Assembly: GCF_006345805.1 (NCBI RefSeq)
Contig: NC_043001.1
Span: 98,084,001 to 98,148,000 of the forward strand
Direction of reading: 5' to 3'
DNA from: Octopus sinensis
Lineage: Eukaryota
Length of the DNA stretch: 64,000 nt
Under the pieces are notes generated by a model. The model did no database searches. It was not told where the DNA came from and was given only the letters and a program-made list of their open reading frames with translations. The number at the start of each line of letters is the position of its first letter. The stretch's first letter is position 1. A program made the position numbers and the translations under genes. Positions 35,671-36,505 of this stretch are shown here, piece by piece.

Positions 35671-35706
35671 GCGCAGGTGTGGCTGTGTGGTAAGTAGCTT
35701 GCTAAC
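35671..35706 (+). mobile_element. SINE family A head, interrupted at the same position as the 22-24 kb copy
   Basis: GCGCAGGTGTGGCTGTGTGGTAAGTAGCTTGCTAAC followed immediately by non-SINE sequence. Confidence 0.9.
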
Positions 35707-36505
35707 CTACTTCCCATGAGTCTCAGTTGTTAGTGTGCGCATGTGTTATTATGTAGTGCACTGAAGAAGATAGCCGGTGGTGTTTAGCCTGCCAAAAGCA
35801 GCTGCTCCGAGGTAAGACTTTTCTCTTGAACCCAGTGAGGGTAATTGGCTGTGCTTATATGTTTTACAAAGAGGGAATCCTCACTGGATTCAAGATGCTG
35901 GTCTACTTCTGGTTCAGCAATATGTTTGATAGTAAATGAAAATTTCTTTCTCATTGTGAGAAGTACAGTTTGGTGGGCGTATCCTTCAACCAAAAATTGT
36001 TCACTTTCTAACAGTGTATGTTTTTACAATATTAGATAACTATATTTTAAGTGTTTACATGAAGTGAACATTTGTTCTCATTGTGAGAAATATAGTTTGG
36101 TGACGTGTCCTAACACCAAGAGTCGTTCGCTGTTTTGAAAAAGTGTGTATTTTATAACTACGTTGGAAAGCTGTATTTCAAGTGAAGCAGTCCAGATTCT
36201 AATTGGGGTACTATAGGGTTGGAGTACCAGCATGCCCAGAAGATTTTTTGCTGTGTTTTTTAACTGTTGTTTTCTTTTTATACTGTGACTTTTTTTATTG
36301 ATCTGTTTGCTTTTTTCTTCTTCCCTTTTGTTTTCTTTTGAATTCTCTCTTTCCTTTTTTGTGAACTATTGTTTTGGACTTTTTATTTTTTAATTTAAAA
36401 CATGGCAAAAAATATGGATTAGATTGTAGAGTTGGAGATTGTCCCAGTTAAGGAGTGCCTCAGACTGCAAGGGAAGAGGATGGTGGTGTTGAAAACGTAT
36501 TCAGT
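35707..36505 (+). mobile_element. 3'-truncated diverged homolog of the ORF1-bearing element at 22271-24464
   Basis: CGAG/GTAAG donor after nt 105, U-rich tract, AAAAC ATG GCA at 36402. Translation MAKNMD*IVELEIVPVKECLRLQGKRMVVLKTYS aligns with MAMKNNKILEWEIIPPKKWLKDPEDRTVVLRTYS. Confidence 0.8.

What the first reader, a model, noticed from the sequence alone, without database searches (positions are those of the whole stretch)
35671..36505. Second, highly diverged family member inserted at the identical SINE nucleotide: evidence for SINE-targeted retrotransposition
Seen: the SINE head ..GTGTGGTAAGTAGCTTGCTAAC is followed directly by the element 5' end here and at 24465, in the same relative orientation. 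The two leaders are largely unalignable and the N-termini are only partly identical, so this is not a recent segmental duplication. Empty sites exist at about 880-916 and 4783-4830. Inference: a sequence-specific (Tx1-like) machinery recognises the region between the A and B boxes of this abundant SINE, or of its parent tRNA, as a safe harbour, and several subfamilies use it. This is the strongest candidate for an undescribed system in the window. Caveat: n=2 and this copy lacks its 3' end, so its ORF1-only status and TSD are not shown.
Basis: partly seen in the sequence, partly recalled or inferred. Interest (0 to 1): 0.92.

Follow-up and report, generated by a model that had tools for sequence, protein, structure and literature searches.

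The report
SINE-targeted ORF1-only retrotransposon in octopus
Two old, broken copies of a small octopus retrotransposon sit at the same nucleotide of an abundant SINE, as do two more copies in another octopus genome, so it most likely inserts there on purpose, a habit already known for its Tx1/L1-type relatives.

Summary
At 35671-35706 a 36-nt SINE head abuts the 5' end of an element (35707 to about 36505). The same head abuts a second element at 24465, in the same orientation.

- **Copy 1** (22271-24464, minus strand) is complete. It lies between two exact copies of AAGTAGCTTGCTAAC (a 15-bp target-site duplication), and the rest of the SINE follows.
- **Two more copies** in Octopus sinensis (L001, L002) carry the SINE head at the same place, within 0-2 nt.
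- **Heads do not track the elements.** The most diverged pair has nearly identical heads. The closest pair has the most different heads. This argues for independent insertions rather than an inherited head.
- **Content.** The element has a leader, an ORF1 (two RRM-like domains plus a CCHC knuckle) kept under purifying selection, a conserved -1-frame orphan ORF, and a LINE-type 3' tail. It has no endonuclease or reverse transcriptase.
- **Relatives.** Distant ORF1 relatives sit in full-length L1/Tx1-type LINEs, some of which also lie in repeats.

Best reading: a non-autonomous, ORF1-only Tx1/L1-type family that targets the anticodon arm of the octopus SINE. That makes it a new member of a known kind. 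The sample is small (four 5' junctions, one 3' junction), and no autonomous partner was found.

The parts
35671..35706 (+). 5' part (head, with the A box) of the host tRNA-derived SINE, ending in AAGTAGCTTGCTAAC; upstream flank of copy 2
   Evidence: 37 of 39 nt match the SINE, and the match stops at about 35710.
35707..36401 (+). Copy 2 leader (5' UTR). It has a GCGCATG motif, a donor-like G|GTAAG about 105 nt in, an internal tandem duplication of about 125 nt (35934-36053 and 36062-36184), and a T-rich tract before the ATG.
36402..36503 (+). Copy 2 ORF1 N-terminus: 34 codons with a stop at codon 7. It is 50% identical to P0001 and is the most diverged of the four copies.
36504..36890 (-). 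Rearrangement junction and an inverted SINE of a different subfamily that truncates copy 2. The 32-bp junction is duplicated in tandem (36482-36513 and 36514-36544).
   Evidence: SINE positions 55-387 match at 36844-36529 on the minus strand.
24465..24499 (-). Head of the host SINE of copy 1. Its last 15 nt (24479-24465) are the 5' copy of the target-site duplication.
22271..24464 (-). Copy 1, the complete 2194-bp element. Parts: leader 24464-23766; ORF1 from 23765 to about 22895, with a frameshift in an A-run near 23450; -1-frame ORFx about 22955-22524; 3' UTR 22523-22271, ending in the LINE tail motif CTGCCTTTATGGCAAATGTTTTGAAATA.
22256..22270 (-). 3' copy of the 15-bp target-site duplication AAGTAGCTTGCTAAC.
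   Evidence: repeat family D3: 15 of 15 identical, spacing 2209.
21880..22255 (-). Remainder of the host SINE of copy 1 (B box, body, tail), continuing exactly from the duplicated 15-mer.
484..916 (-). Uninterrupted SINE copy (empty site; target reads AAATAACTTGCTTAC).
4785..4909 (+). Uninterrupted SINE 5' part (empty site; target reads AAGTAGTTGCGTAC).

Best explanation
The feature at 35671-36505 is the 5' fragment of a degenerate copy of a non-autonomous, ORF1-only non-LTR retrotransposon of the L1/Tx1 type. The family inserts site-specifically, and in one orientation, into the anticodon-arm region of the abundant octopus tRNA-derived SINE, between the A and B boxes.

Shown:
- A full element is about 2.2 kb. 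It has a roughly 700-nt leader, an ORF1 of about 280 aa (two RRM-like domains plus a CCHC knuckle), a short orphan ORF in the -1 frame, and a 3' UTR of about 250 nt ending in the tail motif shared with related LINEs.
- It is flanked by a 15-bp duplication of SINE sequence.

Inferred mechanism:
- An endonuclease and reverse transcriptase supplied in trans by an as yet unidentified autonomous relative nicks the bottom strand between T and A of CTACTT|ACC. That position is the 5' edge of AAGTAGCTTGCT(T/A)AC on the top strand.
- Reverse transcription is primed on the element's 3' tail.
- The top strand is cut about 15 bp downstream. That leaves the SINE head upstream of the element and the duplicated 15-mer plus the SINE body downstream.
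- An AATAAA is formed across the 3' junction (GAAATA|AAGTAG). Transcripts would therefore probably end inside SINE sequence, and those bases could pair with the next nicked SINE and reinforce the specificity.
- SINE copies would serve as a plentiful, harmless landing site.
For: 1. Same site and orientation in four of four copies: window copies 1 and 2 and O. sinensis L001 and L002. A random insertion would hit one given position and orientation of this SINE with a probability of about 1.5e-4.
2. The complete copy has a perfect 15-bp direct repeat, and the SINE resumes exactly after it.
3. Heads do not follow the element tree.
   - Copy 1 and copy 2 are 37% diverged in the ORF, with unalignable leaders, but differ at 1 of 35 head positions (P = 1.8e-6 under equal divergence).
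   - The closest pair, copy 1 and L002 (13% ORF divergence), differs at 7 of 35.
   - Synonymous divergence between subfamilies is 0.8-1.7.
4. The L002 head shares two or three diagnostic bases with a different SINE variant seen at L003:4892.
5. ORF1 is a LINE ORF1p.
   - It carries a CCHC knuckle.
   - The model shows two RRM-like domains, and the top fold matches are tandem-RRM proteins.
   - Its dN/dS is 0.11-0.33.
   - Its distant homologues lie directly upstream of APE+RT+zf-RVT ORF2s in L003, L004, L006 and L007.
   - The best solved-structure match of such an ORF2 is human L1 ORF2p (2e-71), against 1e-24 for R2.
6. The 3' tail motif GCC(C/T)TT(G/A)TGGC.AAT... sits at the 3' end of those LINEs and of copy 1.
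7. The relatives also sit in repeats. L003 is flanked by (ATT)n on both sides. L004 is a head-to-tail array. L005, L007, L008 and L009 lie beside one inverted-repeat element within (TA)n.
8. The Tx1 clade is known to target microsatellites, small-RNA genes and other transposons (PMC4494074). L1-Tx1 families are annotated as recently active in O. vulgaris (PMC13282606).
Against: - There are only four 5' junctions and a single 3' junction. Copy 2, L001 and L002 have all lost their 3' ends.
- No family member carries an endonuclease or reverse transcriptase, and no autonomous partner at the same SINE site was found. The targeting machinery is therefore inferred.
- Both window copies carry GCTAAC and both O. 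sinensis copies carry GCTTCC, whereas the seven empty SINE copies sampled have GCTTAC-like sequence. This could reflect an endonuclease preference or a SINE subfamily. It is also what a head inherited within each genome would give.
- Clade assignment rests on distant ORF1 homology (23-30% identity) and on relatives' ORF2s, not on a reverse-transcriptase tree.
Confidence: 0.75

Rival explanations
1. The SINE head is a constitutive part of the element, and the SINE body may be too. One ancestral insertion into a SINE, or a 5' addition like the U1/U2 heads carried by some Tx1-Mar families, created a composite. The composite is then copied as a unit, and the head is kept constant by selection, for example as part of the promoter.
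For: - All four copies have the head.
- Head variants at the junction are shared within each genome: GCTAAC in the window and GCTTCC in O. sinensis.
- Tx1 families with constitutive small-RNA heads are documented (PMC4494074).
- Three of the four copies lack an informative 3' end.
Against: - Head similarity runs opposite to element similarity. It is far higher than the neighbouring leader or the synonymous sites allow under neutral co-inheritance.
- The heads stay close to the current SINE consensus (1-6 differences in 35).
- The two 15-mers of copy 1 are identical although its ORFs are broken.
- The element ends in its own LINE tail just before the duplicated 15-mer.
- The leader is full of T-runs, so the A box could not drive RNA polymerase III through it.
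Confidence: 0.15
2. The copies belong to a host multigene family, a domesticated ORF1-like gene. Its first exon and promoter would come from a SINE fragment, and it would have a 5' UTR intron. Copies would arise by DNA duplication.
For: - A donor-like G|GTAAG lies 97-105 nt from the junction in all four copies, with a T-rich tract before the ATG.
- One copy is annotated as a gene (LOC115225585).
- ORF1 shows purifying selection.
Against: - The complete copy has a 15-bp target-site duplication with the SINE resuming after it, and a LINE 3' tail.
- The flanks are unrelated between copies.
- Three of the four copies have stops or frameshifts. The annotated protein has lost the first Cys of its knuckle.
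- There is no acceptor AG at a conserved position.
Confidence: 0.05
3. The shared site is a coincidence or a general hotspot. An untargeted L1-like endonuclease that prefers TT|A happens to hit a very abundant SINE repeatedly. Alternatively, the two window copies come from a segmental duplication.
For: - The inferred bottom-strand nick, CTT|ACC, resembles the loose TT|A preference of L1 endonuclease (my own knowledge).
- SINEs make up about 11.6% of the O. vulgaris genome (PMC13282606).
Against: - The probability of the same position and orientation is about 1.5e-4 per insertion, or about 3e-12 for three further copies.
- The flanks and leaders are unrelated, and the ORFs are 37% diverged, so a duplication is excluded.
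Confidence: 0.03

Closest known systems
Tx1L in Tx1D (Xenopus), and crocodilian Tx1-Mar families that insert into Mariner-N4_AMi, Harbinger or LTR elements (Tx1 clade; PMC4494074)
   Same: An APE-type, L1-superfamily retrotransposon lineage that uses a defined site in another interspersed repeat as its landing site. ORF1 has a CCHC knuckle. Related families target microsatellites.
   Different: Here the target is a SINE, a tRNA-derived retroposon, at its anticodon arm. The family found has no ORF2. Tx1 membership could not be tested with a reverse-transcriptase tree.
SINEU-3 and other non-autonomous passengers of Tx1-Mar (PMC4494074)
   Same: A non-autonomous element that shares the target preference of, and is presumably mobilised by, target-specific Tx1-type LINEs.
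   Different: SINEU elements are short and non-coding, with snRNA-derived heads of their own. This element is 2.2 kb, encodes a selected ORF1, and its 'head' belongs to the target.
HAL1 (half-L1), the ORF1-only L1 derivatives of mammals (Bao and Jurka 2010, as cited in PMC4494074)
   Same: It retains a conserved ORF1 and lacks ORF2, so it must borrow ORF2p in trans.
   Different: HAL1 is not site-specific, and its ORF1 is of the coiled-coil L1 type. This family has a conserved -1-frame orphan ORF after ORF1.
Keno (U2), Mutsu (5S) and Dewa (tRNA-gene arrays) in the Tx1 clade, and Dada DNA transposons that target tRNA and snRNA genes (PMC4494074, PMC3706591)
   Same: All insert at a fixed position in a small-RNA-type sequence that is present in many copies.
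   Different: Those target functional multicopy genes. Here the sites seen are dispersed SINE copies. Dada elements have terminal inverted repeats and short fixed duplications, and this element has neither.

Membership tests
Tx1 clade / L1-superfamily sequence-specific non-LTR retrotransposons | ORF2 with an APE endonuclease, a reverse transcriptase and a C-terminal zinc finger | tested here: not met
   The complete copy 1 (2194 bp between its target-site duplications) has no APE or RT, and L001 and L002 have none after ORF1. The feature is present only in distant relatives L003, L004, L006 and L007. The family is therefore a non-autonomous derivative at most.
Tx1 clade / L1-superfamily sequence-specific non-LTR retrotransposons | ORF1p with RRM domain(s) and a CCHC zinc knuckle | tested here: met
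   zf-CCHC in copy 1. An RNP1-like motif and the knuckle are conserved in the alignment. The model has two RRM-like domains, and its fold matches are tandem-RRM proteins.
Tx1 clade / L1-superfamily sequence-specific non-LTR retrotransposons | Placement of the reverse transcriptase within the Tx1 clade in a phylogeny | not testable with these tools
   The family has no reverse transcriptase, and no reference set (Repbase or RTclass1) was available. The ORF2 of the relatives matches human L1 ORF2p at 2e-71, against R2 at 1e-24.
Tx1 clade / L1-superfamily sequence-specific non-LTR retrotransposons | The same sequence in more than 20% of flanks (criterion used in PMC4494074) | tested here: met
   Four of four 5' flanks are the SINE head, and one of one 3' flank is the SINE body. 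The sample is very small.
Tx1 clade / L1-superfamily sequence-specific non-LTR retrotransposons | Endonuclease cleaves the target sequence specifically | not testable with these tools
   This needs the partner's APE domain and a nicking assay.
HAL1-type ORF1-only non-autonomous LINE | ORF1 kept under selection while ORF2 is absent | tested here: met
   dN/dS is 0.11-0.33 between subfamilies. There is no ORF2.
HAL1-type ORF1-only non-autonomous LINE | Termini shared with an autonomous partner | tested here: inconclusive
   The 3' tail motif is shared with full-length relatives. No partner with the same leader or the same SINE target was found.
Retroposon with a constitutive small-RNA-derived head (SINE, SINEU, or headed Tx1-Mar) | The head is inherited with the body and co-diverges with it | tested here: not met
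   Head and element similarities are discordant. Copy 1 and copy 2 differ at 1 of 35 head positions against 37% ORF divergence (P = 1.8e-6). A head held constant by selection is not excluded.
Dada-type DNA transposons targeting small-RNA genes | Terminal inverted repeats and a short fixed target-site duplication | tested here: not met
   No terminal inverted repeats, and the duplication is 15 bp.

The most novel reading that the evidence does not exclude
This would be a previously undescribed lineage of octopod Tx1/L1-type retrotransposons that has specialised on a SINE, at the anticodon arm of its tRNA-like head. It would be propagated mainly as ORF1-only 'half' elements carrying a conserved -1-frame orphan ORF. 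Specificity would be helped by transcripts that end in SINE sequence and pair with the next nicked SINE. It would be the first case of a LINE-type element using a SINE as its dedicated landing site.
Probability: 0.45. Interest if true: 0.5.

Novelty: new member of a known kind. Interest (0 to 1): 0.4.

Why it matters
Site-specific LINEs are natural examples of harmless, programmable integration. Each new target adds to the set of endonuclease specificities that can be compared. A SINE target would show that retroposons themselves can serve as safe harbours. It would also add one mechanism to the nested repeat structure of the very SINE-rich octopus genomes.

The ORF1-only form raises a testable question: how does an element with no endonuclease keep a sharp target? 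It could do so through its partner's endonuclease, through RNA-target pairing, or through ORF1p.

On the practical side, the annotated O. sinensis 'gene' LOC115225585 is most likely a decayed transposon ORF.

Tried and rejected
- **Ribozyme or tRNA at the junction.** An Rfam scan of 21500-37500 gave only microsatellite-driven miRNA noise. ARAGORN does not call the SINE heads as tRNAs. A fold of the SINE head shows the 15-mer forming a hairpin, but the energy is no better than shuffles (z = -0.65).
- **More family copies.**
  - Two word-based protein searches returned only P0001.
  - The exhaustive HMMER search found one further family fragment, P0015 (locus L002), plus distant relatives.
  - A search with the -1-frame ORF found nothing, and it matches no relative in six-frame searches.
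  - Two metagenome scans, one with a conserved ORF probe and one with an occupied-site probe, found nothing.
  - No further copies occur in about 220 kb of fetched octopod loci.
- **Terminal inverted repeats.** None, so a DNA transposon was rejected.
- **Template-switch chimera** (like U6-L1). Rejected because the SINE continues after a target-site duplication at the 3' side of copy 1.
- **Inverted SINE after copy 2 as the displaced body of its host SINE.** Rejected because it has its own, different head.
- **Programmed -1 frameshift.** Only copy 1 has a canonical slippery heptamer (A AAA AAA), so the mechanism linking ORF1 and the -1 ORF is left open.
- **Species of the window.** Not determined.

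Full report
**What is in the sequence**

The window is octopod DNA, rich in (TA)n and (TG)n repeats and in one tRNA-derived SINE. At 35671-35706 the first 36 nt of that SINE run into unrelated sequence after ...GTGTGGTAAGTAGCTTGCTAAC. The same SINE head, on the minus strand, runs into a related element after the same nucleotide at 24465. The exact 15-mer AAGTAGCTTGCTAAC occurs three times in the window. Even allowing two mismatches, 0.23 matches are expected by chance.

The third occurrence, at 22256-22270, is the important one. On the minus strand the order is:
- SINE head (24499-24465);
- a 2194-bp insert (24464-22271);
- the same 15-mer again;
- the rest of the SINE (CAACCACATGGTTCCGGGTTCAGTCC... 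down to about 21880).

Copy 1 is therefore a complete insertion into a SINE with a perfect 15-bp target-site duplication.

Uninterrupted SINE copies lie at 916-484 and 4785-4909, both with degenerate target sites.

**What copy 2 is**

Copy 2 (35707 to about 36503) consists of:
- a 695-nt leader;
- the first 34 codons of the ORF, with a stop at codon 7.

It then breaks at a junction with the interior of an inverted SINE of another subfamily. That 32-bp junction is duplicated in tandem at 36482-36544. Copy 2 is old, dead and truncated.

Against copy 1:
- the leaders are not alignable;
- the first 102 coding nucleotides are 63% identical.

A segmental duplication is excluded.

**What the element encodes**

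The ORF of copy 1 carries a CCHC zinc knuckle. It has one close homologue in the protein databases, O. sinensis LOC115225585 (P0001, 281 aa).

A structure model of P0001 has mean pLDDT 68.5, with 80-92 over residues 20-130. It shows two RRM-like domains followed by the knuckle and a disordered Lys/Arg-rich tail. Its best fold matches are tandem-RRM proteins such as hnRNP A1 UP1 and SFPQ/NONO. From my own knowledge of Khazina and Weichenrieder (2009), this is the architecture of 'type I' LINE ORF1 proteins.

Selection on the two ORFs differs:
- For ORF1, dN/dS between subfamilies is 0.11-0.33, with synonymous divergence of 0.8-1.7. ORF1 was therefore kept functional while the subfamilies diverged.
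- For the -1 ORF, dN/dS is 0.75, so its coding status is uncertain.

After the Lys-rich run, ORF1 stops and a further reading frame of about 130 codons continues in the -1 frame. The arrangement is the same in copy 1, L001 and L002. This ORF has no homologue anywhere.

No endonuclease or reverse transcriptase lies between the target-site duplications. The family is non-autonomous.

**More copies elsewhere**

Two further copies were recovered from the O. sinensis assembly.
- **L001** (the P0001 locus) reads ...GGCATGGCTGTGTGGTAAGTAGCTTGCTTCC|TGTGCATGCG....
- **L002** was found through a chimeric gene model, P0015. It reads ...GGCGTTGCCGTGTGGTAAGAAGTTTGCTTCC|ACTGCGCATGTGCG....

Both carry the SINE head in the same orientation, ending at the same place within 0-2 nt. 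Both have lost their 3' ends. The count is therefore four of four 5' junctions and one of one 3' junction. A random insertion would hit one given position and orientation of this SINE with a probability of about 1.5e-4.

**Targeted insertion or an inherited head?**

The serious rival is that the SINE head (and perhaps the body) is carried along as part of the element. The head-versus-element comparison argues against this.

| Pair | ORF divergence (first 102 nt) | Head differences (of 35) |
|---|---|---|
| Copy 1 and L002 (closest elements) | 13% | 7 |
| Copy 1 and copy 2 (most distant elements) | 37%, leaders unalignable | 1 |

- For copy 1 and copy 2, P = 1.8e-6 if the head had diverged like the ORF.
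- For copy 1 and L001, the 6 of 35 head differences give P = 1.3e-4 at the synonymous rate.
- All heads remain close to the SINE consensus (1-6 differences).
- The L002 head shares bases with a different SINE variant seen at L003:4892.

These results fit independent insertions into different SINE copies. They also fit an endonuclease that requires an intact site.

One observation points the other way. Both window copies read GCTAAC and both O. sinensis copies read GCTTCC, whereas the seven empty SINE copies sampled read GCTTAC-like sequence. A site preference or a SINE subfamily could explain this. So could inheritance within each genome. I therefore leave about 15% on a constitutive head kept constant by selection.

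**Which kind of machinery?**

An exhaustive HMMER search found 47 relatives of the ORF1, nearly all from octopods. Several lie directly upstream of a full ORF2:
- L003 (O. sinensis);
- L004 (O. vulgaris; intact ORF2 of 1132 aa);
- L006 (Argonauta);
- L007 (O. bimaculoides).

These ORF2s have Exo_endo_phos, RVT_1 and zf-RVT domains. They match human L1 ORF2p at 2e-71 over the endonuclease and reverse transcriptase, against 1e-24 for R2. They are L1-superfamily elements. With a knuckle-type ORF1 they fit what others annotate as L1-Tx1 in octopus (PMC13282606, PMC8967140).

Their 3' ends share a motif, GCC(C/T)TT(G/A)TGGC.AAT..., a few bases before the terminus. Copy 1 ends in the same way...CTGCCTTTATGGCAAATGTTTTGAAATA|AAGTAGC. 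Its 3' boundary is therefore a genuine LINE terminus.

The relatives also sit in repeats:
- L003 lies in (ATT)n on both sides.
- L004 is a head-to-tail array of three full-length copies.
- L005, L007, L008 and L009 lie next to one inverted-repeat element within (TA)n.
- L006 has a 16-bp target-site duplication.

Target specificity for microsatellites, small-RNA genes and other transposons is the hallmark of the Tx1 clade (PMC4494074).

**Most likely mechanism**

- Shown: the anatomy, the target-site duplication, the shared site, and the kinship to APE+RT LINEs.
- Inferred: an autonomous relative supplies ORF2p in trans.
- Inferred: its endonuclease nicks the bottom strand at CTACTT|ACC, which is the 5' edge of the 15-mer on the top strand. 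Reverse transcription starts on the tail, and the top strand is cut about 15 bp downstream.

The 15-mer is the anticodon-arm hairpin of the tRNA-like head, between the A and B boxes (by reading).

The junction creates an AATAAA (GAAATA|AAGTAG). Transcripts would then probably end within SINE sequence and could pair with the next nicked SINE. PMC4494074 discusses this kind of help from co-transcribed target sequence for R2-type and related elements.

The insertion separates the A box from the B box by 2.2 kb of T-rich sequence. The element therefore cannot use the SINE's polymerase III promoter. GCGCATG-type motifs and a TCAGTT-like motif just inside the leader may be its own promoter; this is speculative.

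**Comparison with what is known, and verdict**

It works like Tx1L in Tx1D, or like the crocodilian Tx1-Mar families and their SINEU passengers (PMC4494074). Its structure resembles the ORF1-only HAL1 derivatives of L1.

It cannot be filed as a Tx1 element in the strict sense. It has no ORF2, and no reverse-transcriptase tree could be made.

I found no report of a LINE-type element dedicated to a SINE. The library searched is not Repbase, so prior description cannot be excluded.

It is a new member (new target, non-autonomous form) of a well-known kind, not a new system. Interest is moderate.

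Noticed in passing
window 22524-22955 (minus strand); L001 10858-10975; L002 13284-13670: After the Lys-rich end of ORF1, a second ORF continues in the -1 frame in all three copies that reach this point (two subfamilies). It has conserved motifs (LPAV..CP.T.S ... IFFxxGG) but no homologue anywhere. dN/dS is 0.75. 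Only copy 1 has a canonical slippery heptamer.
   Followed up: partly
window 36482-36544: The junction between the truncated ORF1 of copy 2 and the interior of an inverted SINE is duplicated in tandem, as two units of 31-32 bp. This points to a rearrangement rather than a clean SINE insertion.
   Followed up: partly
window 35934-36053 and 36062-36184: A tandem duplication of about 125 bp (71% identity) lies inside the leader of copy 2.
   Followed up: no
window about 24360 and 35811; L001 about 9588; L002 about 11840: All four leaders have a splice-donor-like G|GTAAG/GTAGG 97-105 nt after the SINE junction, GCGCATG-type palindromic motifs near the 5' end, and a long T-rich tract before the ATG. 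No conserved acceptor was seen.
   Followed up: partly
L005 6590-8750; L008 4186-6998; L009 4300-6800; L007 4360-4770: A second group of ORF1 relatives consists of three ORF1-only elements in O. vulgaris and one full-length LINE in O. bimaculoides. All lie beside the same inverted-repeat element, which is embedded in (TA)n. In L008 the ORF1 is bracketed by 780-bp inverted repeats at 89% identity. This may be a Tx1L-in-Tx1D-like arrangement.
   Followed up: partly
L003 5690-11370; L004 1440-15026; L006 6800-12240: Three full-length L1/Tx1-type LINEs. One is flanked by (ATT)n on both sides. One forms three head-to-tail copies with a period of about 5280 bp. One has a 16-bp target-site duplication, TCTTCAACTTATGTTT.
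   Followed up: partly
L001 10001-10846 (P0001): The annotated O. sinensis gene LOC115225585 is a copy of this transposon's ORF1. The first Cys of its zinc knuckle is replaced by Phe (KFHLC...H....C), so it is probably a decayed element rather than a host gene.
   Followed up: partly
window 22746-22769 and 23604-23627: A 24-nt direct repeat (22 of 24 identical) encodes EIEKVMEE in the -1 ORF and EIEKELEE in the ORF1 N-terminus. It may be a trace of a partial internal duplication.
   Followed up: no
window 24930-25226 (minus strand): A remnant of a mariner-type transposase C-terminus (...HPPYTPDIAPSDFHLFRSLQNSL...) lies just upstream of the host SINE of copy 1. Identified by eye only.
   Followed up: no
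window 27811-28110 (minus strand): An ORF resembling the C-terminal end of a retroelement polyprotein (...VIVGALGMIKKGTENYM...). A similar fragment occurs at L003 12084-12392.
   Followed up: no
window 41069-41305, 45419-46036, 48356-48514, 49532-49950, 55384-55684: An unrelated repeat family with direct and inverted copies at 80-96% identity (repeat finder families D16-D19 and inverted pairs I1, I11, I12).
   Followed up: no
window 52825-52870: A SINE head (24 nt exact) is joined directly to the SINE's GGCA.CTTGGG.AAGTGTCTT segment. This is an internally deleted SINE copy, not an occupied target site.
   Followed up: partly
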